From Octopus sinensis (taxonomy: Eukaryota), in assembly GCF_006345805.1 (NCBI RefSeq), contig NW_021833976.1, forward strand, positions 1,228-65,227: a DNA stretch of 64,000 nucleotides, given 5' to 3'. The notes beneath the pieces are model-generated. The model saw only the letters and a program-made list of their open reading frames with translations, had not been told where the DNA came from and did not search any database. Position 1 is the first letter of the stretch, and every line of letters starts with the position of its first letter. A program made the position numbers and the translations under genes. Of this stretch, positions 7,766-63,423 are shown piece after piece.

Positions 7766-7994
7766 GGCGGCGAGCTGGCAGAAACGTTAGCACGCCGGGC
7801 GAAATGCTTAGCGGTATTTCGTCTGCGTTACGTTGTGAGTTCAAAATCCGCCGAGGTAGACTTTGCCTTTCATCCTTTCGGGGTCGATAAATTAAGTACC
7901 AGTTACGCACTGGGTCGATGTAATCGACTTAATACCTATGTCTGTCCTTGTTTGTCCCCTCTGTGTTTAGCCCCTTGTGGGTAATAAAGAAATA
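7766..7994 (+). mobile_element. SINE-B, full length, with TSD GGTATTATA
   Basis: TSD at 7757-7765 and 7995-8003. Confidence 0.92.
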
Positions 7995-12310: not shown

Positions 12311-12334
12311 ATGCATGCATATATTATATATATA

Positions 12335-12369
<35 letters not shown>

Positions 12370-12399
12370 CTATGTATATATATATATATATAGTATATC

Positions 12400-12440
<41 letters not shown>

Positions 12441-12566
12441 ACATATATATATATATTACTATATATATACATAATACATATATATATATATATTATATAT
12501 ATATATATATATTATAATATCAGTAAGACTAAGCATATATATATATATATCTATATATATATCTAT

Positions 12567-15035: not shown

Positions 15036-15444
15036 GGCGCACGAGTGGCTGTGTGGTAAGTAGCTTGTTAACCAGCCACATGGTTCCGGGTTCAGTCCCA
15101 CTGCGTGGCATCTTGGGCAAGTGACTTCTGCTATAGCCCCGGGCCGTCCAATGCCTTGTGAGTGGATTTGGTAGACGGAAACTGAAAGAAGCCTGTCGTA
15201 TATATGTATATATAAGTGTGTGTGTATATGTTTGTGTGTCTGTGCTTGTCCCCGTAGCATTGCTTGACAACCGATGCTGGTGTGTTTACGTCCCCGTCAC
15301 TTAGCGGTTCGGCAAAAGAGACCAATAAAATAAGTACTGGGCTTACAAAGAATAAGTTCCGGGGTCGATTTGCTCAACTAAAGGCGGTGATCCAGCATGG
15401 CCGCAGTCAAATGACTGAAACAAGTTAAAGAGTAAAATAGAGAG
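15036..15444 (+). mobile_element. SINE-A
   Basis: GGCGCACGAGTGGCTGTGTGG head through tail. Confidence 0.9.
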
Positions 15445-16092: not shown

Positions 16093-19000
16093 TTGTATCT
16101 TTACTACCCACAAGGGGCTAAACACAGAAGGACAAACAAGGACAGACAAACGGATTAAGTCGATTAGATCGACCCCAGTGCGTAACTGGTACTTAATTTA
16201 TCGACCCCGAAAGGATGAAAGGCAAAGTTGACCTCGGCGGAATTTGAACTCAGAACGTAACGGCAGACGCAATACCTATTTCTTTACTACCCACAAGGGG
16301 CTAAACACAGAGGGGACAACAAGGACAGACAAACGGATTAAGTCGATTAGATCGACCCCGTGCGTAACTGGTACTTAATTTATCGACCCCGAAGGATGAA
16401 AGGCAAAGTTGACCTCGGCGGAATTTGAACTAAGAACGTAACGGCAGACGCAATACCATTTCTTTACTACCGCACAAGGGGCTAAACACAGAGGGGACAA
16501 ACAAGGACAGACAAAAGGATAAGTCGATTAGATCGACCCCAGTGCGTAACTGGTACTTAATTTATCGACCCCGAAAGGATGAAAGGCAAAGTTGACCTCG
16601 GCGGAATTTGACTCAGAACGTAACGGCAGACGCCATACCTATTTCTTTACTACCCACAAGGGGCTAAACACAGAGGGGACAAACAAGGACAGACAAACGG
16701 ATTAAGTCGATTAGATCGACCCCAGTGCGTAACTGGTACTTAATTTATCGACCCCGAAAGGATGAAAGGCAAAGTTGACCTCGGCGGAATTTGAACTCAG
16801 AACGTAACGGCAGACGCAATACCTATTTCTTTACTACCCACAAGGGGCTAAACACAGAGGGGACAAACAAGGACAGACAAACGGATTAAGTCGATTAGAT
16901 CGACCCCAGTGCGTAACTGGTACTTAATTTATCGACCCCGAAAGGATGAAAGGCAAAGTTGACCTCGGCGGAATTTGAACTCAGAACGTAACGGCAGACG
17001 CAATACCTATTTCTTTACTACCCACAAGGGGCTAAACACAGAGGGGACAAACAAGGACAGACAAACGGATTAAGTCGATTAGATCGACCCCAGTGCGTAA
17101 CTGGTACTAATTTATCGACCCCGAAAGGATGAAAGGCAAAGTTGACCTCGGCGGAATTTGAACTCAGAACGTAACGGCAGACGCAATACCTATTTCTTTA
17201 CTACCCACAAGGGGCTAAACACAGAGGGGACACCAAGGACAGCACAACGGATTAAGTCGATTAGATCGACCCCAGTGCGTAACTGGTACTTAATTTATCG
17301 ACCCCGAAAGAATGAAAGGCAAAGTCGACCTCGGCGGAATTTGAACTCAGAACGTAACGGCAGACGCAATACCTATTTCTTTACTACCCACAAGGGGCTA
17401 AACACAGAGGGGACAAACAAGGACAGACAAACGGATTAAGTCGATTAGATCGACCCCAGTGCGTAACTGGTACTTAATTATCGACCCCGAAAGGATGAAA
17501 GGCAAGTGACCTCGCGGAATTTGAACTCAGAACGTAAGGCAGACGCAATACCTATTTCTTTACTACCCACAAGGGGCTAAACACAGAGGGGACAACAACA
17601 AGACAGACAAAGGATTAAGTCGATTAGATCGACCCCAGTGCGTAACTGGTACTTAATTATCGACCCCGAAAGGATGAAAGGCAAAGTTGACCTCGGCGGA
17701 ATTTGAACTCAGAACGTAACGGCAGACGCAATACCTATTTCTTTACTACCCACAGGGGCTAAACACAGAGGGGACAAACAAGGACAGACAAACGGATTAA
17801 GTCGATTAGATCGACCCCAGTGCGTAACTGGTACTTAATTTATCGACCGAAAGAATGAAAGGCAAAGTTGACCTCGGCGGAATTTGAACTCAGAACGTAA
17901 CGGCAGACGCAATACCTATTTCTTTACTACCCAAGGGGCTAAACACAGAGGGGACAAACAAGGACAGACAAACGGATAAGTCGATTAGATCGACCCCAGT
18001 GCGTAAGGTACTTAATTTATCGACCCCGAAAGAATGAAAGGCAAAGTTGACCTCGGCGGAATTTGAACTCAGAACGTAACGGCAGACGCAATACCTATTT
18101 CTTTACTACCCACAAGGGGCTAAACACAGAGGGGACAAACAAGGACAGACAAACGGATTAAGTCGATTAGATCGACCCCAGTGCGTAACTGGTACTTAAT
18201 TTATCGACCCCGAAAGGATGAAAGGCAAAGTCGACCTTGGCGGAATTTGAACTCAGAACGTAACGGCAACGAAATACGGCTACGCATTTCGCCCGGATGC
18301 TAACGATTCTCTGCATCTCGCCGCCGCCTCTGTGTTTTTATTTATTTGCTGTGACGTTGTATGTGTGAATACGTACGCTTCTGCATACCGATGCGATTCC
18401 AAGGATATGAAGAAGGTGTATGGGTGATGAGATTGTGAATGTTTAAATGTGCATGATCGGTGTGTTAGTGAAGTTGGTCGTGTGTCTGTGAAGGTGTATG
18501 TGTTTCTGCTGTATGATAATGTTACGGTTTACGTGTTTATGGTGTACACTGGCTTCAAATTTTGCCACAAGGGCAGAAATTTTTAGAAGGAGGGGATGAT
18601 TCGATTACATCGACCTCAATGTGTAACTGGTACTTATTTTATCGACCACGGAAGTAGGAAACGTAAAGTCGACAACGGCGGAATTTGAACTCAGACCGTA
18701 GCGACCGGCAAAATACCTATTTCTTTACTACCCACAAGGGGCTAAACACAGTGGGGACAAACAAGCACAGTCGAACGGATTAAGTCGATTATATCGACCC
18801 CAGTGCGTAACTGATACTTATTTAATCGACCCCGAAAGGATAAAAGGCAAAGTCGACCTCGGTGAATTTAAACTCTGAAAGTAACGGCAGAACGAAATAC
18901 CTATCTTTTCTTATTACCCAACCCAAAGGGCTAAACACAGAGGGGACAAACAAGGACACACATAGGTACTAAGTCGATTACATCGACCCGAAAAAAGGAT

Positions 19001-21773
19001 GAAAGGCAAAGTCGACCTCGGTGGAATTTGAACTCACACGTAACACAGACGAAATACCTATTTCTTTATTACCCACAAGGGGCTAGACACAGAGGGGACA
19101 AACAAGGACAGACCATAAGTATTAAGTCGATTACATCGACCCCAGTGCGACCCTGTACTTAATTTAATCGACCCCGAAAGGATGAAAGGCAAAGTTGACC
19201 TCGGCGGAATTTGAACTCAGAACGTAACGGCAGACGCAATACTACTATTTCTTTACTACCCACAAGGGGCTAAACACAGAGGGCAAACAAGGAAGACAAA
19301 CGGATTAAGTCGATTGATCGACCCCAGTGCGTAACTGGTACTTAATTTATCGACCCCGAAAGGATGAAAGGCAAAGTTGACCCGGCGGATTTGAACTCAG
19401 AACGTAACGGCAGACGCAATACCTATTTCTTTACTACCCACAAGGGGCTAAACACAGAGGGGACACCAAGGACAGACAACGGATTAAGTCGATTAGATCG
19501 ACCCCAGTGCGTAACTGGTACTTAATTTAAGACCCCGAAAGAATGAAAGGCAAAGTCGACCTCGGCGGAATTTGAACTCAGAACGTAACGGCAAACGCGA
19601 CCAATACCTATTTCTTTACTACCCACAAGGGGCTAAACCCAGAGGGGACAAACAAGGACAGACAACGGATTAAGTCGATTAGATCGACCCCATGCGTAAC
19701 TGGTACTTAATTTATCGACCCCGAAGGATGAAAGGCAAAGTTGACCTCGGCGGAATTTGAACTCAGAACGTAACGGCAGACGCAATACCTATTTCTTACT
19801 ACCCACAAGGGGCTAAACACAGAGGGGACAAACAAGGACAGACAAACGGATTAGTCGATTAGATCGACCCCAGTGCGTTAACTGGTACTTAATTTATCGA
19901 CCCCGAAAGATGAAGCAAAGTTGACCTCGGCGGAATTTGGAACTCAGAACGTAACGGCAGACGCAATACCTATTTCTTTACTACCCACAAGGGGCTAAAC
20001 ACAGAGGGGACAAACAGGACAGACAACGGATTAAGTCGATTAGATCGACCCCAGTGCGTAACTGGTACTTAATTTATCGACCCCGAAAGAATGAAAGGCA
20101 AAGTTGACCTCGGCGGAATTTGAACTCAGAACGTAACGGCAGACGCAATACCTATTTCTTTACTACCCACAAGGGGCTAAACACAGGGGACAAACAGGAC
20201 GACACAACGGATTAAGTCGATTAGATCGACCCCAGTGCTCGTAACTGGTACTTAATTTATCGACCCCGAAAGAATGAAAGGCAAAGTTGACCTCGGCGGA
20301 ATTTGAACTCAGAACGTAACGGCAGACGCAATACCTATTTCTTTACTACCCACAAGGGGCTAAACACAGAGGGGACAAACAAGGACAGACAAACGGATTA
20401 AGTCGATTAGATCGACCCCAGTGCGTAACTGGTACTTAATTTATCGACCCCGAAAGGATGAAAGGCAAAGTCGACCTTGGCGGAATTTGAACTCAGAACG
20501 TAACGGCAGACGAAATACGGCTACGCATTTCGCCCGGCATGCTAACGATTCTGCCATCTCGCCGCTCTGTGTTTTTATATTATTTGCTGTGACGTTGTAT
20601 GTGTGAATACGTACGCTTCTGCATACCGATGCGATTCCAAGGATATGAAGAAGGTGTATGGGTGAGAGATTGTGAATGTTTAAATGGGCATGATCGGTGT
20701 GTTAGGTGAAGTTGGTCGTGTGGTCGTGAAGGTGGTTGTGTTTCTGCTGTATGATAATGTTACGGTTTACGTGTTTATGGTGTACACTGGCTTCAATTTT
20801 GCCACAAGGGCAGAAATTTTTAAGAAGGAGGGGATGATTCGATACATCGACCCAATGTGTACTGGTACTTATTTTATCGACCACGGAATAGGAAACGTAA
20901 AGTCGAACAACGGCGGAATTTGAACTCAGACGTAGCGACCGGCAAAATACCTATTTCTTTACTACCCACAAGGGGCTAAACACACAGTGGGGACAAACAA
21001 GCACAGTCGAACGGATTAAGTCGATTAGATCGACCCCAGTGCGTAACTGATACTTATTTAATCGACCCCGAAAGGATAAAAGGCAAAGTCGACCTCGGTG
21101 GAATTTAAACTCTGAAAGTAACGGCAGACGAAATACCTATTTCTTTATTACCCACAAGGGGCTAAACACAGAGGGGACAAACAAGGACACACATAGGTAC
21201 TAAGTCGATTACATCGACCCCGAAAGGATGAAAGGCAAAGTCGACCTCGGTGGAATTTGAACTCACAACGTAACACAGACGAAATACCTATTTCTTTATT
21301 ACCCACAAGGGGCTAGAACAGAGGGGACAAACAAGGACAGACATAAGTATTAAGTCGATTACATCGACCCCAGTGCGTAACTGGTACTTAATTTATCGAC
21401 CCCGAAGGATGAAAGGCAAAGTCGACCTCGGCGGAATTTGAACTCACAACGAACGCAGACGAAATACGGCTACGCATTTCGCCCGGCTGCTAACGCTTCT
21501 GCCAGCTCGCCGCCTTTTTTTTTTTTTTTTTTTCCAACTTATACCTATTTCTTTATTACCACAAGGGGCTAAACAGAGAGGGGACAAACAAGGACAGACA
21601 TAGGTATTAAGTCGATTACATCGACCCCAGTGCGTAACTGGTACTTAATTATCGACCCGAAAGGATGAAGGGCAAGGTCGACCTCGGCGGAATCTGAACT
21701 CACAACGTAACGCAGACGAAATACCGCTAAGCATTCGCCCGGCGTGCTAACGTTTCTGCCAGCTCGCCGCCTT
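16093..21773 (-). repeat. SINE-B-derived tandem array (~184-bp unit, about 28 units) with a ~2.24-kb higher-order duplication
   Basis: 12 homogeneous units at 16093-18325, 7 at ~19250-20565, two blocks of 4 diverged units, and one full copy at 21542-21773; junction GACGCAATACC|TATTTCTTTAC. Confidence 0.95.
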
Positions 21774-21839
21774 ATTTGTAGTGGATAAATATGCTGATAA
21801 GGAATATATTTGTATATGTTGAACACTCAGACATTTTGC

Positions 21840-26052: not shown

Positions 26053-26269
26053 CTCTTTTTACTCTTTACTCTTTTACTTGATTCAGTCATTTGACTGCGG
26101 CCATGCTGGAGCACCGCCTTTAGTCGAGCAAATCGACCCCGGGACTTATTCTTTGTAAGCACAGTACTTATTCTATCGGTCTCTTTTGCCGAACCACTAA
26201 GTGACGGGGACCTAAACACACCAGCATCGGTTGTCAAGCAATGCAAGGGGGACAAACACAGACACACAA

Positions 26270-26313
<44 letters not shown>

Positions 26314-26478
26314 ACGACAGGCTTCTTTCAGTTTCCGTCTACCAAATCCACTCACAAGGCATTGGTCGGCCCGAGGCTATAGCAGAAGACACTTGCCCAA
26401 GATGCCACGCAGTGGGACTGAACCCGGAATCATGTGGTTGGTTAGCAAGCTACTTACCACACAGCCACTCCTGCGCCT
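26053..26478 (-). mobile_element. SINE-A
   Basis: Full-length reverse-complement copy. Confidence 0.92.
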
Positions 26479-26615
26479 GTAAGATATTATACGTAAGATA
26501 TTCCAAGAATATGTAAATATTTTGTGACTAAATAATTTCCGTATGTTTCATCTTCACGCAGATAATTGCAATTATGCCTTTTTTGTTTTCTCTACATTTC
26601 TTTTTCCTCTCAACC

Positions 26616-30661: not shown

Positions 30662-31224
30662 TTCATGCGTACATACGTACAGGGCATCATTTTGACATTC
30701 TAGCTTTATTTCTTTGTACATAAGTTCGAGGACAATATATATATAATTGCGAAAAAAATTTTAAATGCAATATCAAACAAACCAGACATCAACGACAGAA
30801 ATTGAAGAAGAACAACAGCAACTATAATAGTGAAAATAATAACAATAATGATAATGATGATGAACGTGGTTTTGGTGAATATTAGGTTTAATATAGTTTT
30901 TTTTTCCTTATTGTCTTCAGGCGTATTGGCCTTTCTAATTTGCAAAGTTGTTGTTTTTTTAAAAATTCCAAATATATTGCTTAACAGAAAAAGCTATGAA
31001 ATTAGTGCAAAAGTGTGTATTGGAGGAGAATACAAAAGTCTAATGGGAAAAGAGGTTAACAAATAGTTTTGGGTGTTTATCAATTATATATACTTAAAAA
31101 AATAAAGTTGATGGCAAAAACAATGCTTTAAGAATCGAAACACAATATGCATAAATACATTACTCATTGCATCTTCCTCTCTTTCGTTGACTCTCCATCT
31201 CTCGCTCTTTCTCCCTCCTTATCT

Positions 31225-31271
31225 AACTGTCTGTCTGTCTATGTATCTATCTATCTATCTATCTATCTATG

Positions 31272-31334
<63 letters not shown>

Positions 31335-31343
31335 TTATCTATA

Positions 31344-31380
<37 letters not shown>

Positions 31381-31445
31381 ATCTATCTATCTATCTATCT
31401 ATATGTCTGTCTATCTATCTATCTATCTATATATCTATCTATCTG

Positions 31446-31514
<69 letters not shown>

Positions 31515-31552
31515 TAATCCATCCATCTATCTATCTATCTATCAATCCATCC

Positions 31553-31590
<38 letters not shown>

Positions 31591-31595
31591 ATACT
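31225..31595. repeat. (TATC)n microsatellite
   Basis: Long tetranucleotide run; source of the YLSI ORFs. Confidence 0.97.
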
Positions 31596-31870
31596 TATCT
31601 ACTTTTAAATAGATGTAATGATTGCATTCTTCAATTAAATGGAGTTGGTCTATTAACTCTGAATATCCTTGTTGCTTATTTTGATTTTAATCACCTTATT
31701 TTGATATTGTATGGATAATACCATACTAAATTCTGGTACCTAAACTTATGTACCATATTCATCTGTATCTACTTATCCATTTAAATATATATCTGTGTAT
31801 GTGTGTGTGCATGCACACACACGTACACATGCACACACCTATATACATATATATGTATACACACACACAC

Positions 31871-34548: not shown

Positions 34549-35524
34549 ACATATATATATATATTACATATGTACAAAAGATAGAGCTGTAGATTTGAAA
34601 ATACCATTCCTGCATGCATACGTATGTATAACTCCAAAGACATGCGTCCATATCTATTTACATATAGTGAGAGAATCTATCTGGTAGATAGAATGTGAGA
34701 CAACCATTATATTTCTTTCACTTGTTTATTTTAGATGTACGCTATTCAAGTATTATTCATCTCTCAATCAATTCTTTATTCTATACTACTGTATCTCCCA
34801 CCGTAGATTTATAAATAGAAACCCATTAACTAAAACATTAATGAGAATATAGCTAGAATGCTTACTTTTATATTTAAGTACACTTAGAATACAATATAAC
34901 ATTCCTTTATCAATCCACTTTGCCTGCGAGATTCTAAAGATATGCCAGACAACGTGATCAGACATAATAAAAAATATATCAGAAACATGCGCATATACAG
35001 CAAAACGTCCCTTGCTTTAGCCTATATAGATTTTTTGTGTGGATGTATACATAAGTGCATGTAGGTATCTACGTGTATGTATATATATATATTTATATAC
35101 ATACATATTAAGTGTATATATATATATAATATTTATTTATTCATATAAATATATATATATATATATAGATATATATATGTATGTATATATATATATATAT
35201 ATGAATATGTATTTATCATTAAACACATACGAGCTTGGACACTTTTCCTTCCCCTGACCTAATCTTCTCTACGCTTTCGGAAGAAGAACTATGCTCCAAA
35301 TATTGAACATTTACTGTTTTTCTCACATTTGCTAAGCTCATGCAAGCTAGGTGTACTTCCATTTCTGTTGTGTTGTTATTTGTCATTTTTAATTAAAATT
35401 TCATTGGCCTATATATGTAGGTAGATACAAGCAAATGTATAATATTTATAATATATAATTACGGATATTTGCATATATATATATATAATATATAATATAT
35501 ATATATATAAAGTTAATATAAAAA

Positions 35525-35751
35525 GGCGGCGAGCTGGCAGAAACGTTAGCTCGCTGGGCGAAATGCGTGAGCTGTATTTCGTCTGTCGTCACGTTCGGTT
35601 CAAATTCCGCCGAGGTCGACTTTGCCTTTCATCCTTTCGGGTCGATAAATTAAGTACCAGTTACACACTGGGGTCGATATAATCGACTTAATCCGTTTTT
35701 CTGTCCTGTTTGTCCCCGTCTGTGTTTAGCCCCTTGTGGGTAGTAAAGAAT
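35525..35751 (+). mobile_element. SINE-B
   Basis: Full head and tail; approximate TSD ...AAGTTAAT. Confidence 0.9.
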
Positions 35752-35760
35752 ATATATATA

Positions 35761-46560: not shown

Positions 46561-46619
46561 CATCCTAAGGAAACATTACTAATTTTATGCCCTGAAAAGT
46601 GTTAAAAGAATAGAACCGA

Positions 46620-47665
46620 TTAGGTTCAGCAAGGCACTAGCAATAGAGAAAGAAACAAAAGAGCCCAAGGAGAGGCATTGCTATTGAAGTGTTGGTGGCG
46701 AGATCGATCCTGGACTGATTCTGCAATGCCAAACAGGGTGGATGCGTTGGCAGGGCTAGTGCATGTGCTGAAAGAAATAACGGAACTACAGCCGCTCGAT
46801 GGGTCACAATGGAAGTTGTTCAAAGTGACAAGAAAGCAACTATTCGGTCGTTGTTGGGGCAAAGTGGATGTACGGAATTTGAGCCCGAGCTGGTGTATGC
46901 CTCATTTCAGCGGCTCTTCACCCAACTATTTGGGACGAATGGCGGTTCGGTGTGCAGGATGGACTTTATTGCCAACTTCGATGGCATGTCATCACTTTTG
47001 GCAAGTGGGGCGAGGCGTTCCGAAATGCCGATACCACCTGCAGAAACACGGGATGTAATGATGGGCTGCACGCTGAGCAAATTGCCTGGCTTGGGTGGTC
47101 TGCTCTAAGAGCTTTATTATTATATACCAGACATGTTTGGCGGGCTTTTAACAGATATCTCACGCAACTGGCAGCAGAATGGGAGATTTCTTAGCTAAGT
47201 GAGCCGAGGAGAGGTGGCAATGCCGGGAAAGGACCCGAACAAGAGCAGTCAAATAGAAAATTTTCGCTGCTGAATGCAAACTTCGAAATTTTGGCAAAGA
47301 TGCCTGCGAAAATGTTGGCACTTGTCATGATGCGCAAACTGGTGCCATCCCAAGCAGATCAATCCAAGACAACCTCCACCTTATGCAACATATCATGCAA
47401 CATATCATAATGAGGCTGGCATGGGTGGGGCTTTCATCAATTTGGATCAATCTAATGCTTTTAGTAGGGCTGACCACCAATACTTGGCGGCCGGTTTTTG
47501 TCCTATTTTCCGTGGCTGTATCACAGCAAGGCACAGCAACATCAGTTCAGTAGTTCGGGTAAATGGTATCTATCGGAGCCATTCAGCACCATGCCCTCGG
47601 GCCGTCAAGGCTCTCCCCTCTCATCTCTCCTGTATGTCATAGTTCTAGGGCCACTACTTCGGATG
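46620..47665 (+). mobile_element. Decayed L1/Tx1-type LINE reverse-transcriptase region
   Basis: INLDQSNAFSRADHQYL (LD..KAFD.V.H motif), SKLPGLGGLL (K.PG.DG motif), GRQGSPLSSLLYVIVLGPLL (RQG.PLS motif); frameshifts. Confidence 0.85.
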
Positions 47666-49804: not shown

Positions 49805-49853
49805 AAACAACAGCAACAGTAATAATAATAACGACGAAGATGATGATGATGAG

Positions 49854-49885
<32 letters not shown>

Positions 49886-50194
49886 CGGTGGTGGCGGTGG
49901 TGGTGGTGGTTTTGATGGTGGTGGTGGTGGTGGTGATGATGATCATGATGATCATGATCATGATGATGAACATGTTGGTGGTGGTGGTGGTGGTGGTGGT
50001 TTTGATGGCGGTGGTGGTGGTGGTGATGATGATGATGATGATGATGATAATGATGATGATGATGATGATCATGTTGGTGGTGGTGGTGGTGGTGGTGGTT
50101 TTGATGGCGGTGGTGGTGGTGGTGATGATGATGATGATGATGATGATAATGATGATGATGATGATGATGATGATTATGATGATGATGATGTTGT

Positions 50195-50242
<48 letters not shown>
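49722..50242. repeat. Compound (GAT)/(AAT)/(GGT) microsatellite with ~100-bp higher-order repeats
   Basis: Block GGT6-8 TTTGATGG(C/T) GGT5-6 (GAT)n occurs three times. Confidence 0.92.
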
Positions 50243-51257: not shown

Positions 51258-51812
51258 TCTATATTTAAGATATGAGGAATTATGTACATTATTTACATTT
51301 GACGATATTTGTCCTCATCTTGTTTGTTGTTAACACATCGTTTCGGCTGATATACCCTCCAACCTTCATCAGGTGTCTTGGGGGAAATTTAGAACCTGGG
51401 TTCTCATTCCTGGGTGAAAACAAAAATATTTTGGAAATCTTTCCTTTAAAGGGGTATATTTTTCTTTCGGTATAAGATTCAGGAACAATTGCATAATCAC
51501 AAAATAATCTAGTGAAATATATCATAATTGATCCCACAGTTCTATATTTAAGGGAATAGAAATTATGTACATTATTTACATTTGACGGATATTTGTCCTC
51601 ATCTTGTTTGTTGTTAACACAACGTTTCGGCTGATATACCCTCCAACCTTCATCAGGTGTCTTGGGGAAATTTAGAAACTGGGTTCTCATTCCTGGGTGA
51701 AAACAAAAATATTTTGGAAATCTTTCCTTTAAAGGGGTATATTTTTCTTTCGGTATAAGATTCAGGAGCAATTGTATAATCACAAAATAATCTAGTGAAA
51801 TATATCATAATT
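51258..51812 (-). mobile_element. HHR family F1: 284-bp tandem dimer (retrozyme / Penelope pLTR-like)
   Basis: Two near-identical units; HHR motifs at 51332-51377 and 51616-51661. Confidence 0.88.
51616..51661 (-). ncRNA. Intact type I hammerhead motif (F1), palindromic ACGU stem III
   Basis: Sense GACAC-CTGATGA-A-GGTTG GAGGGTATAT CAGCC-GAAA-CGT-T-GTGTT; the sister copy at 51332-51377 has U16.1 changed to A. Confidence 0.8.
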
Positions 51813-51822
51813 TTATAAGGGA

Positions 51823-52222
51823 CTGGCAGTATCGCCCGGCGTTGCTCGGGTTTGTAAGGGAAATAACTATATAAGCATTTTTAGAGAGTTATAGCCAAAA
51901 AATAGCAAAAAAATGCATTAAAAATGGAAAAAAAAATGATGGTAAATTTCTTTTTAAATCGTTGACTCATCGTAGACATTTTTAGAGAGTTACTTCCCTT
52001 ATATAATAGCGAAAAAATGCATTAAAATGGAAAAAATTATGGTAATTTTTTTTAAAATCGTAGACTCATCGTAGACGCGCGCTAATACCCAGAAGGGCTC
52101 GATATGAATCACGACTATAAGATACCCGGTTTTGGTTAAACTGCACCGCAAAATGTGGGAGTAGTTAGGAATCTAAATCGTAGGAGACAGACAGCACACA
52201 ACCTCACTTTTATATATAAAGA
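51823..52222 (-). mobile_element. Non-autonomous Helitron
   Basis: Same family as the 5336 copy; sense terminus CCAG instead of CTAG; fewer internal subrepeats. Confidence 0.85.
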
Positions 52223-52478
52223 TGTCATCATGGAGTGAACAAATGTTAAGCATATTATTGTTACGCTTAGTGGGGGAAATGGTATTGTTACTAATTGATT
52301 GTTTCTTGATGGGGAGTTTAGTCTGCCGCAACAAAAAAAAACAGTTTTCGTTTTAAAAAGGAATTAAGGTCACTTTCCGTTTATAGCAAGAAGAAAAGAA
52401 AATGAAGGTTTTTAAATTTCTAATTTCGTAAGAACTGACATTTTAACAGAAAGGAGTGATAAACCATATAATCTTTCT

Positions 52479-52707
52479 GCGAGCTGGCAGAAACGTTAGA
52501 GCGCCGGGCGAAATGCGTAGTCGTTTTTCGTCTGCCGTTACGTTCTGAGTTCAAATTCCGCCGAGATCGACTTTGCCTTTAATCCTTTCGCGGTCGATAA
52601 ATTAAGTACCAGTTACGCACTGGGGTCGATGTAATCAACTTAATCCCTTTGTCAGTCCTTGTTTGTCCCCTCTATGTTTAGCCCCTTGTGGGTAGTAAAG
52701 AGATATA
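52479..52707 (+). mobile_element. SINE-B with 14-bp TSD CATATAATCTTTCT
   Basis: TSD at 52465-52478 and 52708-52721. Confidence 0.92.
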
Positions 52708-52734
52708 CATATAATCTTTCTACCCAAGTCTACC

Positions 52735-53369: not shown

Positions 53370-54200
53370 TGGCTTCATGCTCTTAATTAATGGGGCTAGA
53401 GTCATTCCAGGTTGCTTGTGCAGGGGCGACATCGTGCGTAGAACCGACCAGGTTCACCAGGGTTCTCCATGGATGGCGGTCTTGTGCCAGCCCTTCGGTA
53501 TCCTCGGAGGTGACGTCGTGCTTCTGGAGGTGTCTCCAATGACGTCCTGCCGTCTGGTGTGGGGATTGCCTTAAGGCGTCTTCCAGCCCACAACTACTAA
53601 GTCGAATGGGAGAATCCGTGTAAAATGTATTTCTTTACTACCCACAAGGGGCTAAACACAGAGGGGACAAACAAGGACAGACAAACAGATTAAGTCAATT
53701 ACATCGACCCCAGTGCGTAACTGGTACTTTATTTATCGATCCCGAAAGGATGAAAGGCAAAGTCGACCGCAGCGGAATTTGAACTCAGAACGTAACGGCA
53801 GACGAGATACGGATACGCATTTCGCCCGGCGTGCTAACGTTTCTGCCAGTTCGCCGCATTGTAAAATGATCTAGCGGGAAACGCGCAAACGATGGATAGC
53901 TATGGGTTGGGAAGTTGCAGCTGATACGTCCTTGGTCTCTGTTCTTTGTTGGAAACATGACATCATCCAATATTTCCGATGGCTTTCAGGACTCTACAAT
54001 CGAAACCATCGATACTCTTCGCCGGGGTCTTTGAGAGGGGCGACCTTTCTGCAACATACAGGAGAATGGAAAGGATCGATACACTGTAGGTGCGAAGTTT
54101 TGTCTTCCGAAATATAGCGGAGGGGCACCAGTGAGACTTCCATAGGGAGCACATGAATCACGTCGGCCAGTCACAGGTTCAGTTCGTCTCCGGGAGCAGT
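53370..54200 (-). mobile_element. Decayed RTE-clade LINE 3' region, split by SINE-B
   Basis: KTKLRTYSVSILSILLY..E and FDCRVLKAIGNI, then LAQDRHPWRTLV beyond the SINE. Confidence 0.75.
53628..53859 (-). mobile_element. SINE-B nested in RTE, 9-bp TSD TGTAAAATG
   Basis: TSD at 53619-53627 and 53860-53868. Confidence 0.92.
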
Positions 54201-54543
54201 ACATTGTTTTAACATTCTGAATAAAAAGTAGTTGTCAGCTACTTCATTTACGTCTTATTGGGAAGGACACAAATATTGATTCTCGTCATATCCCTTAATT
54301 CTGAAGATCTTGACTATGCTTATTAGCACAGTTTAGCAGGAAATGCATCATTTATAATATTGTTGCTACTTGCTCTACCTCAGATCTATACAGACGTAAG
54401 CCGTTGGTTCATTGTTGTTAAGCGTTGAGTCCCTACACTGAGCAATTGTCGGCTTTATGATATCACCATAGTAGGAATGCACACGCATATCACACAAGTC
54501 ACACACACAAACACACACATATATATATATGTATGTAACTATG

Positions 54544-54609
<66 letters not shown>

Positions 54610-54614
<5 letters not shown>

Positions 54615-54832
54615 CTTTACTACCCACAAGGGGCTAAACACAGAGGGGACAAACAAGGACAGACAACGGATGAAGTCGATTACATCGACCCCAGTGCGTG
54701 ACTGGTAATTTATTTATCGACCCGGAGGGATGGAAGGCAAAGTCGACCTCGGCGGAATTTGAACTCAGAACGTAACGGCAGACGAAATACGGCTACGCAT
54801 TTCGCCCGACGTGCTAACGATTCTGCCAGCTC
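54610..54832 (-). mobile_element. SINE-B
   Basis: Reverse complement, flanked by TA and CA repeats. Confidence 0.9.
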
Positions 54833-54871
54833 ACACACAACACACACACACGCATATATATATATATATAT

Positions 54872-57440
54872 ATAATTTAACAATTGAGGGCCAAATTAAT
54901 TAATTATTAATCAATTTCACCAAGTGTTCAGTATGCAAAGGGACCATTCAAGGCGAATTAAATTATTACATTATATAAAAGGGCTAGTAAATAAATTACT
55001 TTGCCGCATACTGAACAATTAGAAATAGCAGCTAAAAAACTTTTTTAGGCTATTTCTAAACTTAAAGAAAATCTCTCTCATATATAGTGTTGCATAATTT
55101 AACTCACAAAAGTTGGGGTAATGACATCGAAAAATCAAATGCTAAGGTTATTCGAGAACGTACGTTCAAGATTAGTCAAAACAACATTTCTATCATCGGC
55201 TCGGAAATTCTTGGTTTGGATTGGAAATACTGAATAAGAACATACCCTCTCGAAGATCTGCTCCCAACTAACAGTGTCAACAAATTCAAAATAAGCAAGC
55301 GAAGAATCTCTGTTCTCCTTTCCACCAGCGTGGTTAAATCATCAAACTCTATGCTTATTTCGGTAAAGTCCGAAGCATTAATCAGAGGGAGATTAATTAT
55401 AATTTCAACAATTGAGGGCAAAAGAATTAAATTATATCAATTCACCAAGTGTTCAGTATGCAAAGGGCCATTCAAGGCGAATTCAAATTATTACATTATA
55501 TAAAAGGGCTTAGTAAAATAAATTACTTTGCCGCATATGAACTCATTAGAAATAGCAGCTAAAAAACTTTTTTAAGGCTATTTAATACTTAAGAAAATCT
55601 CTATATATATAGTGTTTGCATAATTAATCACAAAAGTTTGGGGTAATGACATCGAAAAATAATGCTAAGGTTATTCGAGAACGTAGTTTCAGATTAGTCA
55701 AAACAACATTCTATCATCGGCTCGGAACATTCTTGGTTTGGATTGGAAATACTGAAAATAAGAACATACCCTCTCGAAGATTGCTCCCAACTAACAGTGT
55801 CAACCAATTCAAAATAAGCAAGCGAAGAATCTCTGTTCTCCCCTTTCCACCAGCGTGGGTTAACATCATCAAAATCTATGCTTATTCGGTAAAGTCCGAA
55901 GCATTAATCAGAGGGAGATAATTATAATTTCAACAATTGCGGGCAAAATTAATTAATTATTAATCAATTTCACCAAGGGTTCAGTATGCAAAGGGACCAT
56001 TCAAGGCGAATTCAAATTATTAATTTATAAAAGGGCTTAGTAAAATAATTACTTTGCGCATACGAACTCATTAGAAATAGCAGATCTTCGAGAGGGTATG
56101 TTCTTATTTTCAGTATTTCCAAATCCAAACCAAGGAATTTCCGAGCCGATGATAGAAATGTTGTTTTGGACTAATCTTGAAACGTACGTTCTCGAATACT
56201 TAGCATTTGATTTTTGCGATGTCATTCCCCCAAACTTTGTGAGTTAATTATGCAACACTATATAGAGAGATTTTCTTTAAGTATTAGAAATAGCCTTAAA
56301 AGTTTTTTAGCTGCTATTTCTAATGATTCAGTATGCGGCAAAGTAATTATTTTACTAGCCCTTTTATATAATGTAATAATTTGATTCGCCTTGAATGGCC
56401 CTTTGCATACTGAACACTTGGTGAAATTGATTATAATTAATTAATTTTGCCCTCAATTGTTGAAATTAAATTAATCTCCCTCTGATTAATGCTTCGGACT
56501 TTACCGAAATAAGCATAGAGTTTGATGATGTTTAACCCACGCTGGTGGAAAGGGGAGAACAGAGATTCTTCGCTTGCTTATTTTGAATTTGTTGACACTG
56601 TTAGTTGGGAGCAGATCTTCGAGAGGGTATGTTCTTATTTTCAGTATTTCCAATCCAAACCAAGGAATTTCCGAGCCGATGATAGAAATGTTGTTTTGAC
56701 TAATCTTGAAACGTACGTTTCGAATAACCTTAGCATTTGATTTTTCGATGTCATTACCCCCAAACTTTGTGAGTTAAATTATTGCAAACACTATATATGA
56801 GAGAGATTTTCTTAAGTATTAGAAATAGCCTTAAAAAAGTTTTTTGCTGCTATTTCTAATGAGTTCAGTTGCGGCAAAGTATTTATTTTACTAAGCCCTT
56901 TTATATAATGTAATAATTTGAATTCGCCTTGAATGGTCCCTTTGCATACTGAACACTTGGTGAAATTGATTAATAATTAATTAATTTTGCCCTCAATTGT
57001 TGAAATTATAATTAATCTCCCTCTGATTAATGCTTCGGACTTTACCGAAATAAGCATAGAGTTTGATGATGTTACCCAGCTGGTGGAAAGGGGAGAACAG
57101 AGATTCTTCGCTTGCTTATTTTGAATTTGTTGACACTGTTAGTTGGGAGCAGACTTCGAGAGGGTATGTTCTTATTTTCAGTATTTCCAATCCAACCAAG
57201 GAATTTCCGAGCCGATGATAGAAATGTTTTTTGACTTCTTGAAACGTACGTTCTCGAATAACCTTAGCATTTGATTTTTCGATGTCATTACCCCCCCAAC
57301 TTTTGTGAGTTATATGCAAACCTATATATGAGAGAGATTTTCTTTAAGTATTAGAAATAGCCTTAAAAAAGTTTTTTAGCTGCTATTTCTAATGAGTTCA
57401 GTATGGGCAAAGTAATTTTTTTACTAAGCCTTTTATATAA
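54872..57440. mobile_element. HHR family F3: ~530-bp tandem array with central inversion (five HHR motifs)
   Basis: Units at 54872-56083 in one orientation and 56079-57440 inverted; HHR motifs at 55153-55203 (-), 55676-55724 (-), 56142-56194 (+), 56672-56722 (+), 57208-57256 (+); (TA)n at both ends. Confidence 0.88.
56142..56194 (+). ncRNA. Type I hammerhead motif (F3), U4C core, 8-nt palindromic stem III
   Basis: CGAG-CCGATGA-T-AGA...TCT-T-GAAA-CGTACGT-T-CTCG; predicted cleavage after 56190. Confidence 0.7.
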
Positions 57441-57672
<232 letters not shown>

Positions 57673-58708
57673 ACGATATGCCGACATCCACATTCATACT
57701 GCGCGTGCTCAGTCATCCATTTCTTCAATCCAGAGGGATTTGACACACACTCAAATATTCTAAATAGATACTCAACGCACGAAAGAAGAGAGAGATTTAC
57801 ACACGAGCATCGATTACTGAAACTTCTCACCACACACGCATATCACCACAAATTATAAGAGACGGCGGCGTCGAATGTGTGCAACATGAACAAACTCTTC
57901 CCTGCGTATTTAATCTGTAGCATACTGTTATTCCTCAATTGAACATCGACACTAATCGCGTAGACCTATCTTGAAGGATATTCCAGGTATGACCAAATCA
58001 TCGGTGTTTCGTGTGCAAAGAACACAGAAACACATTATGCAACCTTATTCTCTTTTTTTTTCTAAATACTGGAAAAGTAATAAAACAGAGAATTAGCGAT
58101 TTTGTTTCTGCCTCGAGCAACGACACACCTGAGCATAGATACGAGCAAATATTTCGTATGCATAGTATGTGGATGCTGTCTATGCATTTGTGAGAGTTCG
58201 TAAATATTTGCATATATTTGTGTGTGTATTATGGTGTGTTGTGCTGTGTGTGTATGTGCGTGTGATTTATGGCGTATTACCACAGATTATAACTTGTCAA
58301 AGTCATTCTGCTTTTTGTCCTATAATATGAATAGAGATTATGAATATTTGATAAAATAAACGTGATGATACATTTACTGTGTATGAAGTAATGAAGACAA
58401 ATATGTACTTTAGTAGCGTGAGGATTAGTGGGGAGGATATTTATAGTGACATTATAGTAATAATGTTAGTAATAGTAGTAGTGGTATAGCGGAGAAGTCT
58501 AATTAAGTATAGGAATAATACTTTGATGGATATGTAATGGTAAACATCTATACGGTGGCAGTGGATGGTGGTTGTTCGTCGTAGCCGTCGTTGCCGTCGT
58601 GCTGGTGTTGCTAGTGGTGGTGGTAGTGATGGTGGTGCTGGCAAGCTTTGGGGATGGGTCCTGTTTCTGTTGGTGTTAGTGATTTCTCTATTGTTGTTAT
58701 TATGTAAA

Positions 58709-59112
58709 CTCTTTTACTTGTTTCAGTCATTTGACCGCGGCCATGCTGGAGCACCGCCTTTAGTCGAGCAAATCGACCCCGGGACTTATTCTTTGTAAGC
58801 CCAGTACTTATTCTATCGGTCTCTTTTGCCGAACCGCTAAGTGACGGTGACATAAACACACCAGCATCGGTTGTCAAGCAATGCTAGGGGGACAAACACA
58901 GACACAAGCATATACACACACACTTATATATGCATATATACATATATACGATGGGCTTCTTTCAGTTTCCGGCTACCAAATCCACTCACAAGTCATTGGT
59001 CGGCCCGAGGCTATAGTAGAAGACACTCACCCAAGGTGCCACGCAGTGGGACTGAATCCGGAACCATGTGGTTGGTAAGCCAGCTACTTACCACACAGCC
59101 ACTCCTGCGCCT
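58709..59112 (-). mobile_element. SINE-A
   Basis: Full-length reverse-complement copy. Confidence 0.92.
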
Positions 59113-59827
59113 ATGTATGATCATAGTTTTGAATTTTTGAAACGCCATGCTGATTTTGGTGAAGGCCGTGTTGATGTTAGTATGGTGGTAGTGTTTATGT
59201 GGGTAAAATGGCATGTAACTGCCTCATTGGTGATATTTCAGCGTTTACTAAGAGTCTTTTGCACACATTCTGGTTAGTGCATCTCGTGTGCAATGCTTTG
59301 ACTTGGATAAATCGTTAACATTATGACTGAATAATCGAAAAAATAAACGTGAATCGTAACTTGAATTTAAGTGTTATTTCAGCAATACAGCTAAATCTGA
59401 ACGACAGATTGCCGTAAAAGAAATGGACACATGTCTAGGTGACATGTGGGACGGCTTCAATGGGGATATGTTAACACAGATCTCTGTAATTGTTGCGGAA
59501 ATGTTCCGGTGGAAGTTTTTAATCATATTGTGTCCACGTTTACTCCATCCACGCAACTATTATGTTCTTCAAGAAAAATTATGAATGAGAAGTGATGCTG
59601 ATTTGGAGTTTAATTTTTTGTAGATGAAGGCACAGAGTAGAACCTTTCCCATTGGTCATTTCGTGAAATTGAATTTAAAAACAATAATTATTTCAGAAAA
59701 CTATGAGACGCGATGAATTCAGTATTAGATGAGAAATAGATAATTATTGTTGCTTCGAGAATATCAGAAATAAACGCAGAGAACTTACTACGATAGCCAA
59801 ATATGGATTTAAAAATCCGATACAAGG

Positions 59828-60003: not shown

Positions 60004-60868
60004 CCACTCTACGATAGCAAAATATTGAAGAATCATTATGAGCCCTGCAAAAATAAATGTATTTGTCACTGACGTCGAAGCTACAAAGCTAACTGAATTG
60101 ATTTCAGATAGAAAATTAATGATTCGTGATTCTAATAAAGAGACTTGTTTCAGTGAGAAATACGGCATATTGGTTTTTGAGAACGCATTGACAATACTAG
60201 GAAATTGACGTCAATTTGCGGGCTTAGCATAATGCAGATTTAAATTGTATAATGTAAAAGTTACAATGTAAATTAAATAGGATTTGCGTGTTTTGAAGTG
60301 AGGCGATTTAATCAGGTTATATTTAAACTAAATTCATAGAAATAAACCACTTACTGGAAATTCGTCAGTAATTTGACAGCGATCACATGATCTGATATGG
60401 TATAAGTACTTTTTGCTTAAACGAACTCAGAGTGAAGTTACAGTTCATAGCAGAAGTTAACAGAAAGTCGTCGCATTAATGAGAATATCGGTAACTGTGA
60501 ATTGTAAAATAAATTAGCAAAAAGTAAATTTCATACGTTCCAGTAGACGAATAATGAAACGAGCTAACAATTTCTTTTCGCTTCGGTTGCTACATACTAC
60601 TTGAAAGACAGCAGTAAATTGAACGATTGCACGACCAAAAAATAATCGTAATTTTGAAATAAATTATGACAAGTGATCTCTGTTGATATTGTCATATGCT
60701 GCGGAATTACTAATATCTCACAAATATATATATAGGTCATTGAATGTGTAGCGACGTAGCAAATTTGTCATTACAAATATATTCGAAGGTAATAGCTGCA
60801 ACACAAAAATTTAAAAGCTCATATAAATCTTAAATTCTAAAAAAATATATCAATATATTATAGATATA

Positions 60869-61279
60869 GGCGCAGGGGTGGCTGTGTGGTAAGTAGCTTG
60901 CTAACCAACCACATGGTTCCGGGTTCAGTCCCACTGCGTGGCATCTTGGGCAAGTGTCTTCTGCTATAGCCCCGGGCCGACCAATGCCTTGTGAGTGGAT
61001 TTGGTAGACGGAAACTGCAAGAAGCCTGTCGTATATATGTATATATATGTATGTGTGTGTGTTTGTGTGTCTGTGTTTGTTCCCCTAGCATTGCTTGACA
61101 ACCGATGCTGGTGTGTTTACGTCCCCGTCACTTAGCGGTTCGGCAAAAAGAGACCGATAGAATAAGTATTGGGCTTACAAAAAGAATGAGTCCCGGGGTC
61201 GAGTTGCTCGACTAAAAGGCGGTGCTCCAGCATGGCCGCAGTCAAAATGACTGAAACAAGTAAAAGAAAGAAAGAAAGA
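60869..61279 (+). mobile_element. SINE-A
   Basis: GGCGCAGGGGTGGCTGTGTGG head; tail grades into (GAAA)n. Confidence 0.92.
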
Positions 61280-62885: not shown

Positions 62886-63004
62886 ATACGTGATTATTCG
62901 TGTGTAGAATATGATTGACTGACTAAATGTTTGTGTAATTGTGCTTGCTTCGAGAAATATATTTCTGCTATATCTTTAAGCCTTAGACAAACATGTTACA
63001 TATA

Positions 63005-63423
63005 GGCACAGGAGTGGCTGTGTGGTAAGTAGCTTGCTAACCAACCACATGGTTCCGGGGGTTCAGTCTCACTGCGTGGCACCTTGGGCAAGTGTCTTCT
63101 ACTATAGCCTCGGGCCGACCAAAGCGTTGTGAGCGGATTTGGTCGACGGAAACTGAAAGAAGCCCGTCGTATATATGTATATATATATATGTATATGTGT
63201 GTGTTTGTGTGTCTGTGTTTGTCCCCCTAGCATTGCTTGACATCCGATGCTGGTGTGTTTATGTCCCCGTCATTTAGCGGTTCGGCAAAGAGAGACCGAT
63301 AGAGAGAGTACTGGGCTTACAAAGAATAAGTCCCGGGGTCGAGTTGCTCGACTAAAAGGCGGTGCTCCAGCATGGCCGCAGTCAAATGACTGAAACAAGT
63401 AAAAGAGTAAAAGAGTAAAGAGT
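63005..63423 (+). mobile_element. SINE-A
   Basis: Full length with (GTAAAAGA)n tail. Confidence 0.92.

What the first reader, a model, noticed from the sequence alone, without database searches (positions are those of the whole stretch)
54872..57440. F3: 2.6-kb palindromic array of ~530-bp units with five U4C hammerheads facing both ways
About 2.3 units in one orientation join ~2.5 inverted units at a 5-bp AGCAG microhomology (56079-56083) linking two different positions of the unit, so this is not a simple mirror. The HHR has an 8-nt palindromic stem III (ACGUACGU). Predicted + strand cuts after 56190, 56719 and 57252 give 529- and 533-nt monomers. Either strand's transcript would contain both cleavable monomers and >1 kb of self-complementary RNA (inference). 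Concatemer plus inversion fits rolling-circle reverse transcription with a strand switch.
Basis: partly seen in the sequence, partly recalled or inferred. Interest (0 to 1): 0.8.

Follow-up and report, generated by a model that had tools for sequence, protein, structure and literature searches.

The report
Head-to-head retrozyme-like repeat array
A 2.6-kb block of about five near-identical, non-coding ~540-bp repeats, each with an imperfect hammerhead-ribozyme-like motif, sits head-to-head inside a (TA)n microsatellite, which matches the known insertion pattern of Penelope-like retroelements and their ribozyme-bearing passengers, so it is an interesting example of a known kind, not something new.

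Summary
The structural observation holds. About 2.3 units of a ~538-bp repeat on the minus strand (54871-56083) meet about 2.6 units on the plus strand (56079-57448). They overlap by 5 bp (AGCAG, 56079-56083), which joins unit position ~128 to ~429, so the array is not a mirror. No other copy exists in the window.

The hammerhead call is only partly supported. All five copies carry CCGAUGA (U4C), GAAA, a palindromic helix III and a 4-bp helix I. However, helix II is weak with a U·U at its base. No Rfam hammerhead model matches, even at permissive thresholds. As assembled, only two of the five copies are free of 1-nt deletions in essential positions. Copies differ mainly by indels, which points to unpolished long-read consensus, so the units are probably identical in reality.

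In both arms the sense 3' end points outward into (TA)n and the 5'-truncated end lies at the centre. This is the published insertion pattern of Penelope-like elements: partial tandems, an inverted 5'-truncated copy, and (TA)n targets.

Best reading: a non-autonomous, retrozyme-like element copied from multimeric or circular RNA by two target-primed cDNAs that joined by microhomology. A simple snap-back does not fit the arm lengths. It is a new member of a known kind, of moderate interest. Cleavage, transcription and read support are untested.

The parts
54833..54874 (.). Left flank microsatellite: (CA)n followed by about 22 bp of (TA)n, abutting the array. A SINE-like element (54600-54832) lies just upstream.
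   Evidence: Sequence read; repeat family D11; SINE-family matches.
54871..56083 (-). Left arm: 2.28 units with the sense (hammerhead-like) strand on the minus strand. Its sense 3' end lies at the left (TA)n, in an ATTATAAT-like patch of the unit at about unit 291. Its 5'-truncated end lies at the junction (unit ~128).
   Evidence: BLAST; nhmmer; alignment.
55157..55679 (-). The one complete minus-strand monomer between predicted cleavage sites (523 nt as assembled).
55153..55203 (-). Hammerhead-like motif, minus strand. It has the CCGAUGA box and ACGUACGU, but GAAA reads GAA as assembled (a 1-nt deletion).
55676..55724 (-). Hammerhead-like motif, minus strand. It has the CCGAUGA box, but helix III reads ACUACGU and there are further 1-nt deletions in helix II as assembled.
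56079..56083 (.). Inversion junction: the 5-bp microhomology AGCAG shared by both arms. In the sense RNA the two joined sites are CUGCU (unit ~128-132) and AGCAG (unit ~429-433). The 3' ends of the two antisense cDNAs would therefore be complementary to each other.
56079..57448 (+). Right arm: 2.57 units with the sense strand on the plus strand. Its 5'-truncated end lies at the junction (unit ~429). Its 3' end lies in a TTTTATATAAT patch (unit ~196) that merges into (TA)n.
56142..56194 (+). Hammerhead-like motif that passes the relaxed descriptor. The predicted cut is after 56190.
56672..56722 (+). Hammerhead-like motif with an intact core. The 3' strand of helix I lacks C1.1 as assembled. The nominal cut is after 56719.
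57208..57256 (+). Hammerhead-like motif that passes the relaxed descriptor. Helix II is shortened to 22 nt as assembled. The predicted cut is after 57252.
56191..57252 (+). Two complete plus-strand monomers, 56191-56719 and 56720-57252 (529 and 533 nt as assembled; the consensus unit is 538 nt with 33.6% G+C).
57434..57673 (.). Right flank: a 240-bp (TA)n microsatellite.
   Evidence: TRF; sequence.

Best explanation
This is one young insertion of a non-coding, ~540-nt tandem-repeat retroelement of the animal 'non-LTR retrozyme' type. It was integrated into a (TA)n microsatellite by the machinery of a Penelope-like element (PLE).

Shown:
- About five effectively identical units lie in two divergent arms.
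- In both arms the sense 3' end points outward and ends in a TA-rich patch of the unit that abuts (TA)n.
- The 5'-truncated ends of both arms meet at a 5-bp microhomology.
- Each unit carries a hammerhead-like motif with 12 of the 13 conserved core positions (U4C is the exception), a 4-bp helix I and a 2-bp helix III with a palindromic GUAC loop.

Inferred:
- A multimeric or circular RNA of the element was reverse-transcribed from both nicked (TA)n 3' ends, which annealed to UAUA-rich patches at unit ~196 and ~291.
- Each cDNA ran more than two unit lengths, so the template was a concatemer or a circle.
- The two cDNA 3' ends (…CTGCT-3' and …AGCAG-3') annealed to each other and were sealed. 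This resembles twin priming of L1.
- The ribozyme-like motif, if active, would act mainly as a dimer through the ACGUACGU palindrome. It would cut multimeric transcripts into ~540-nt monomers, probably inefficiently.
- Read-through transcription of either strand would also give a hairpin of more than 1 kb.
For: - Array geometry, orientation and junction.
- The units are effectively identical. They carry 0.8% substitutions against 3.6% indels relative to the consensus, and almost all variants are private to one copy. The gap-open to mismatch ratio is 3.5 in the array, against 0.46-0.6 for other repeats in the window. The other long tandem array in the window shows the same indel noise. This indicates assembly noise on identical units.
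- The unit has 33.6% G+C. Its ORFs have no Pfam domain and no protein homologue.
- The relaxed hammerhead descriptor hits only the array in the 64 kb. It hits 2 of 5000 dinucleotide shuffles of the unit.
- PLE insertions are partial tandems, often with an inverted 5'-truncated copy adjacent at the 5' end. (TA)n is a preferred target of the Naiad clade of PLEs (PMC8557442).
[quoted passage not shown] They have a 1-2-bp helix III with a palindromic loop and act as dimers. The axolotl HHR_Amex2 motif has a U·U at the base of helix II (PMC7229834; PMC4209133).
- U4C is a documented natural core variant. It lowers activity in vitro but still allows viroid infectivity (PMC3088659).
- Retrozymes are reported to be related to the pseudo-LTRs (pLTRs) of PLEs (bioRxiv 10.64898/2026.07.22.740005).
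Against: - No Rfam hammerhead model matches, even on 121 nt at E<=10.
- Helix II is weak (-0.5 kcal/mol). The ribozyme fold is 6.8 kcal/mol above the MFE of the 96-nt segment, and helices II and III are almost absent from the ensemble.
- U4C combined with U·U at 10.1/11.1 is likely to give poor catalysis.
- Only one locus is available. No second copy, relative or PLE ORF was found in the window or in any searchable collection. Mobility is therefore not shown.
- A unit of ~540 nt is above the 150-450 bp reported for animal retrozymes.
- The descriptor used for the chance estimate was relaxed after seeing the motif.
- There are no transcription or read-level data.
- Target-site duplications cannot be read in a microsatellite.
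Confidence: 0.5

Rival explanations
1. This is an ordinary minisatellite-type tandem repeat. Its hammerhead-like motif is a decayed relic or a coincidence. One part was inverted at the DNA level, either by microhomology-mediated template switching during replication (FoSTeS/MMBIR) or by repair of a break. No RNA intermediate was involved.
For: - Rfam does not recognise the motif, and the predicted thermodynamics do not favour the ribozyme fold.
- Only one locus is seen.
- A 5-bp microhomology is also typical of replicative template switches.
- The sense strand carries CUGCU and AGCAG 301 nt apart. These could mediate an intrastrand fold-back.
Against: - A chromosomal fold-back would make the right flank the reverse complement of the left flank, and it is not.
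- A simple inversion of the left arm does not restore a seamless tandem array, because unit 291 would abut unit 429.
- This model leaves several things unexplained: both outer ends lie in TA-rich unit patches next to (TA)n, both sense 3' ends point outward, and a complete hammerhead core with a palindromic helix III sits in a low-GC repeat (2 of 5000 shuffles).
Confidence: 0.25
2. The inversion is an assembly or sequencing artefact, such as chimeric fold-back long reads or a gap-filling error. In the real genome the array is simply direct, or belongs to two loci.
For: - The array carries indel-dominated noise typical of unpolished long-read consensus.
- It lies between (TA)n tracts, where assemblies often break.
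- Chimeric reads also join at short microhomologies.
Against: - The array is internal to the sequence and has different, non-complementary unique flanks on each side. A fold-back read would return to the same flank.
- The junction is offset by 301 nt, whereas missed-adapter or template/complement read-through gives a mirror.
- The whole array is only 2.6 kb, so ordinary long reads should span it together with both flanks.
- There are no Ns in the window.
Confidence: 0.1
3. One cDNA was made by rolling-circle reverse transcription. It then switched strand and snapped back onto itself at the AGCAG/CTGCT microhomology, copying itself to give the second arm.
For: - The complementary pentamers are 301 nt (or 232 nt the other way round) apart in the unit. 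They would allow self-priming.
- The junction has the expected microhomology.
Against: - Arm lengths do not fit. A copy of the left arm could give at most about 907 nt of right arm, but 1370 nt are present.
- A copy of the right arm would end at unit ~196, but the left arm runs on to unit ~291.
- The model therefore needs an extra deletion or truncation event.
Confidence: 0.1

Closest known systems
Animal non-LTR retrozymes (type-I hammerhead tandem repeats; Cervera & de la Peña 2020, PMC7229834)
   Same: - It is a non-coding, low-GC tandem repeat of a few hundred bp, with one type-I-shaped hammerhead motif per unit and a short array (dimers to multimers).
- Helix III has 2 bp with a palindromic tetraloop, which implies action as a dimer.
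- A U·U at the base of helix II also occurs in the axolotl HHR_Amex2 motif.
   Different: - The unit is ~540 nt, against the 150-450 bp reported.
- The core carries U4C.
- Helix II is long (25 nt) and weak.
- No Rfam model detects the motif.
- The head-to-head two-arm layout is not described in that paper ('inverted' occurs 0 times).
- Expression and circularity are unknown here.
Penelope-like element insertion architecture (pseudo-LTRs, tandem/inverted copies, microsatellite targets; PMC8557442)
   Same: - It has partial tandem copies and an inverted 5'-truncated copy joined at the 5' side.
- It is inserted in (TA)n, the preferred target reported for the Naiad clade of PLEs.
   Different: - There is no RT or GIY-YIG ORF in the array, and none was recognised in the window.
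- The repeated unit is 540 bp, not a 3-4 kb element.
- No 30-40-bp 'tail' was identified.
- Naiads are reported to lack canonical hammerheads.
L1 twin-priming inversions (Ostertag & Kazazian 2001; cited from my own knowledge)
   Same: - It has two divergent segments with their 3' ends at the target flanks.
- The 5' ends are joined internally at a short microhomology formed by complementary cDNA 3' ends.
   Different: - The element class and enzyme differ.
- The template here must be multimeric or circular, because each arm is longer than two units.
- Priming is on a (TA)n target, not on poly(A)/T-rich sites.
Natural U4C hammerhead variant in viroids (discussed in Perreault et al. 2011, PMC3088659)
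   Same: It has the same single change in the CUGA turn of the core.
   Different: - In the viroid case, reduced activity in vitro and biological function in vivo were shown.
- Here nothing was assayed, and a second weakness (U·U at 10.1/11.1) is present.

Membership tests
Hammerhead ribozyme, type I | Conserved core: C3 U4 G5 A6 N7 G8 A9, G12 A13 A14, A15.1-U16.1, H17 | tested here: inconclusive
   Twelve of the 13 fixed positions are present in the consensus and in all five CCGAUGA boxes. U4 is C in all copies. U4C is a documented natural variant with reduced activity. The canonical CUGANGA descriptor gives no hit.
Hammerhead ribozyme, type I | Three helices around the core, with a 10.1-11.1 pair (usually G-C) closing helix II | tested here: inconclusive
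   Helix I is CGAG/CUCG plus AAGG/CCUU, with pair probability 0.57-0.93. Helix III has 2 bp with a GUAC loop. Helix II has U·U at its base, then 3+3 bp around an internal loop (-0.5 kcal/mol), with pair probability about 0.03. Near-identical copies allow no covariation test.
Hammerhead ribozyme, type I | Match to the curated covariance models (Rfam hammerhead families) | tested here: not met
   No hammerhead family is listed at the gathering score, at E<=10 on 54600-57700 or at E<=10 on 56105-56225.
Hammerhead ribozyme, type I | Site-specific self-cleavage 3' of H17 | not testable with these tools
   This needs in vitro transcription of a dimeric construct.
Animal non-LTR retrozymes | Tandem repeats of about 150-450 bp, from dimers to multimers, each unit with a type-I hammerhead | tested here: inconclusive
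   The array is tandem, with 2.28 + 2.57 units. The unit is ~538 nt, above the reported range. The hammerhead status is as given above.
Animal non-LTR retrozymes | Low G+C (<45-50%), non-coding, with no LTR, PBS or PPT | tested here: met
   G+C is 33.6%. The longest consensus ORFs (116 and 75 aa) have no Pfam match and no homologue. LTR, PBS and PPT were not searched for formally, and none is evident in a 538-nt unit.
Animal non-LTR retrozymes | Dispersed copies in the genome and expression as linear and circular monomer RNA | not testable with these tools
   Only 64 kb of the genome is available and it holds no other copy. There are no relatives in the metagenome, viral or prokaryote collections.
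Penelope-like element insertion (architecture only) | Partial tandem copies with an inverted 5'-truncated copy adjacent to the 5' end | tested here: met
   The arms are divergent, with both 5'-truncated ends at 56079-56083 and both sense 3' ends outward. This was compared with the description in PMC8557442.
Penelope-like element insertion (architecture only) | Insertion bias for microsatellites, with (TA)n for Naiad | tested here: met
   (TA)n abuts both ends, at 54853-54874 and 57434-57673. The literature source is.
Penelope-like element (autonomous) | An ORF with a PLE reverse transcriptase and a GIY-YIG endonuclease | tested here: not met
   There is no ORF of 120 aa or more with real complexity in or near the array. 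The unit ORFs have no Pfam hit. If mobile, the array is non-autonomous. A full six-frame domain scan of the window was not run.

The most novel reading that the evidence does not exclude
The locus is a 'frozen' product of reverse transcription of a circular or multimeric ribozyme RNA, primed from both nicks of a (TA)n target. If head-to-head arrays with variable microhomology junctions recur genome-wide, they would give the first structural evidence for how PLE machinery integrates retrozyme circles. They would also explain how the puzzling tandem/inverted PLE structures arise. In addition, such inverted arrays would be built-in hairpin-RNA sources that could feed small-RNA or editing pathways against the element family.
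Probability: 0.15. Interest if true: 0.65.

Novelty: new member of a known kind. Interest (0 to 1): 0.35.

Why it matters
The transposition cycle of Penelope-like elements and of their ribozyme-bearing passengers is still undefined. The literature calls the tandem/inverted structures and the microsatellite bias unexplained (PMC8557442).

This is a short, young array. Its two arms cannot be copies of each other. Its outer ends sit in TA-rich patches at a (TA)n target, and its inner ends join through complementary cDNA 3' termini. That makes it a clean single-locus case for a twin-priming model on a multimeric or circular template.

It also offers a natural U4C / U·U hammerhead variant to test for residual activity. 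On its own, with one locus and no RNA or read data, it is an example and not a discovery.

Tried and rejected
- Rfam searches at three scales found no hammerhead or other ribozyme family.
- A scan of metagenome contigs with a degenerate hammerhead pattern gave five GC-rich bacterial chance matches. They have no helix I and no other similarity to the unit.
- An exact 20-mer of the most conserved part of the unit gave no hit in viral contigs. It gave one chance 20-mer in a Cytophagales MAG.
- A search in protein space with the 116-aa consensus ORF, aimed at finding spurious gene calls on related repeats, found nothing. The same approach with a SINE-derived ORF, aimed at identifying the organism, also found nothing.
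- Exact-protein look-ups of two window ORFs were not on record.
- Searches of papers for SINE sequence strings returned nothing. Supplement searches for CCGAUGA/ACGUACGU in retrozyme papers also returned nothing.
- The organism is therefore unidentified. It is eukaryotic, microsatellite-rich and SINE-rich. My recollection that the SINE looks cephalopod-like is unverified.
- The whole-unit RNA fold is only modestly more stable than shuffles (z = -2.4), so the unit is not a viroid-like rod.
- Snap-back self-copying was rejected on arm lengths.
- A simple DNA inversion was rejected because reverting it does not restore a seamless array.
- ARAGORN found no tRNA in the window.
Full report
**What is there**

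I read 54400-58000 directly. All matches lie between 54871 and 57448.
- The left arm, 54871-56083, is in minus orientation. Its unit coordinates run 291->1, 533->1, 533->128.
- The right arm, 56079-57448, is in plus orientation. Its unit coordinates run 429->533, 1->533, 1->533, 1->196.

nhmmer with a majority consensus (538 nt) gives the same picture and finds no further copy in the 64 kb.

They overlap by exactly AGCAG at 56079-56083. The bases on either side depart from what each arm would continue with. The junction joins unit ~128 on one strand to unit ~429 on the other. That is a 301-nt offset, so the array is not a mirror. I calculate that a random junction has roughly a 0.4% chance of showing 5 bp or more of microhomology.

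**Quality of the sequence**

The copies differ in an unusual way. Against the consensus there are 21 substitutions but 68 deletions and 24 insertions in 2573 nt. Nearly all variants are private to one copy.

In a self-BLAST of the window, the array has 3.5 gap openings per mismatch, whereas other repeats have 0.46-0.6. The other long tandem array (the 183-bp units at 16098-20518) shows the same indel excess, while dispersed repeats do not.

I read this as consensus noise of a long-read assembly that was not polished inside tandem repeats. Three things follow:
- The units are probably identical in the genome.
- The 529/533-nt lengths are approximate.
- Single-base deletions inside individual ribozyme-like motifs cannot be trusted either way.

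**The hammerhead-like motif**

The consensus reads ...AAGGAAUUUCCGAG CCGAUGA UAGAAAUGUUGUUUUGACUAAUCUU GAAA CGUACG U U|CUCGAAUAACCUU... .
- It has C3, G5, A6, U7, G8, A9, G12-A14, A15.1, U16.1 and H17 = U. Position 4 is C in all five copies.
- Helix I is CGAG/CUCG, with a possible AAGG/CCUU extension. It is strongly predicted, with pair probabilities of 0.57-0.93.
- Helix III is A-U and C-G closed by GUAC, so that ACGUACGU is an 8-nt palindrome. Two copies can pair through it at -9.8 kcal/mol. This is the arrangement described for animal type-I hammerheads that work as dimers (PMC4209133; PMC7229834).

Three points count against the motif:
- Helix II is 25 nt long, with a U·U at 10.1/11.1 and only 3+3 bp (-0.5 kcal/mol). 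Its pairs have about 3% probability in the ensemble and those of helix III about 0.1%.
- The ribozyme fold lies 6.8 kcal/mol above the MFE of the 96-nt segment.
- No Rfam hammerhead model matches at the gathering score, at E<=10 on 3.1 kb, or at E<=10 on 121 nt around the best copy.

Each oddity has a precedent:
- U4C is a known natural variant that lowers activity in vitro yet allows viroid infectivity (PMC3088659).
- The axolotl HHR_Amex2 motif has a 2-bp helix III with a tetraloop and a U·U at the base of helix II. It cleaves well only as a dimer.

I wrote a relaxed descriptor after seeing the motif. It hits only the array in the window, and 2 of 5000 dinucleotide shuffles of the unit. The canonical descriptor hits nothing.

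As assembled, only two of the five copies pass the relaxed descriptor (56142-56194 and 57208-57256). The other three each carry a different 1-nt deletion: C1.1 is lost at 56720, GAAA reads GAA at 55166-55168, and ACGUACGU reads ACUACGU at 55681-55687. That is about what the indel noise predicts, at roughly 1.4 indels per 56 nt.

My judgement is that this is a genuine hammerhead-derived motif of doubtful or weak activity. It is not five demonstrated ribozymes.

**The unit otherwise**

The unit has 33.6% G+C. Its longest consensus ORFs (116 and 75 aa) have no Pfam domain and no homologue. The monomer folds only modestly better than shuffles (z = -2.4). It contains a local hairpin at consensus 98-143 (-15.4 kcal/mol), and the truncation point of the left arm lies in the 3' arm of that hairpin.

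**Surroundings**

The array is bounded by (TA)n on both sides. On the left there are about 22 bp after a (CA)n run and a SINE-like element. On the right there are 240 bp.

The outer end of each arm falls in a TA-rich patch of the unit: TTTTATATAAT at unit ~196 on the right, and ATTATAAT at unit ~291 on the left. The unique flanks are not complementary to each other. The window is a repeat-rich, apparently gene-free eukaryotic region. I could not identify the organism.

**Mechanism**

The key feature is polarity. In both arms the sense strand (the one with the ribozyme-like motif) has its 3' end at the flank and its 5'-truncated end at the centre. Target-primed reverse transcription starts at the RNA 3' side and stops short of the 5' end, so this is the polarity expected if each arm is a separate cDNA primed from one side of a staggered break.

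(TA)n is self-complementary, so either nicked 3' end could anneal to the UAUA-rich patches of the RNA.

Each arm exceeds two unit lengths and the units are effectively identical. The template was therefore a concatemer or a circle copied round and round.

The sense RNA carries CUGCU at ~128-132 and AGCAG at ~429-433. The two antisense cDNAs stopping there end in ...AGCAG-3' and ...CTGCT-3'. These are complementary to each other and can anneal to close the insertion. This is the logic of L1 twin priming (from my own knowledge; I found no open paper applying it to PLEs).

[quoted passage not shown] The authors call these structures mechanistically unexplained (PMC8557442). [quoted passage not shown]

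**Why not a single strand switch**

If one cDNA had snapped back on itself at the pentamers, the second arm would be a copy of the first.
- A copy of the left arm could give about 907 nt, but the right arm has 1370 nt of unit sequence.
- A copy of the right arm would stop at unit ~196, but the left arm runs on to ~291.

Either way an extra event is needed. A chromosomal fold-back would mirror the flanks, which is not seen. Undoing a simple inversion does not restore a seamless array.

**Artefact?**

The noisy consensus and the (TA)n flanks call for caution. Several points argue against an artefact:
- The array is internal.
- It has distinct flanks.
- The junction is offset and not mirrored.
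- The array is short enough to be spanned by ordinary long reads.

I put this rival at about 10%. Only the reads can settle it.

**Comparison and verdict**

The array works like, and most probably is, a non-LTR retrozyme-type element inserted in the PLE manner. For membership of the hammerhead family, one test is failed (Rfam score) and two are inconclusive. For the retrozyme class, composition and lack of coding capacity are met, unit size is above the reported range, and dispersal and circular RNA are untestable here. The PLE-type architecture and target are met, but no PLE ORF is present.

I file it as a probable new member of a known kind. The head-to-head layout is known for PLEs but was not mentioned for retrozyme arrays in the papers I could search.

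Interest is moderate. A specialist would find it a tidy illustrative locus, and the twin-priming reading is testable genome-wide. Nothing here overturns current views, and function is unshown.

Noticed in passing
window 16098-20518 (also 3013-3248, 7765-8000, 21284-21777, 35521-35760, 52479-52710, 53625-53857, 54600-54832): There are about 24 tandem copies of a 183-bp SINE-like unit, plus dispersed copies of the same family, one of them directly left of the array. ARAGORN finds no tRNA gene. The tandem copies differ mostly by indels, like the F3 array, while the dispersed copies differ mostly by substitutions. This suggests that tandem repeats in this assembly were not polished.
   Followed up: partly
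window 23-432, 15031-15437, 26060-26481, 58708-59114, 60861-61267, 63000-63417: A dispersed ~400-bp repeat family is present in both orientations at about 90-93% identity, with substitution-dominated divergence.
   Followed up: no
window 5335-5840 and 51822-52223: A ~100-bp tandem unit (2.6 copies) at 5483-5750 has an inverted, ~92-94% identical partner about 46 kb away, next to a 283-bp tandem duplication (51258-51812).
   Followed up: no
window 46600-47650: ORF fragments in three frames have normal amino-acid complexity and include a string (INLDQSNAFSRADHQYL) that reminds me of a non-LTR reverse-transcriptase motif. Pfam gave no match, so this is unverified. It is not a recognisable Penelope-like ORF.
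   Followed up: partly
window 49839-50242, 31220-31601, 57434-57673, 12319-12566, 1188-1374: There are very long microsatellites, including (GAT)~135, (TATC)~95 and several (TA)60-126. The region is apparently gene-free.
   Followed up: no
unit consensus 98-143, e.g. window 56283-56330 and 56815-56866: There is a unit-internal hairpin (AUUAGAAAUAGCC...GCUGCUAUUUCUAAU, -15.4 kcal/mol). The 5' truncation point of the left arm (CTGCT) lies in its 3' arm, so it may be a pause site for reverse transcriptase.
   Followed up: partly
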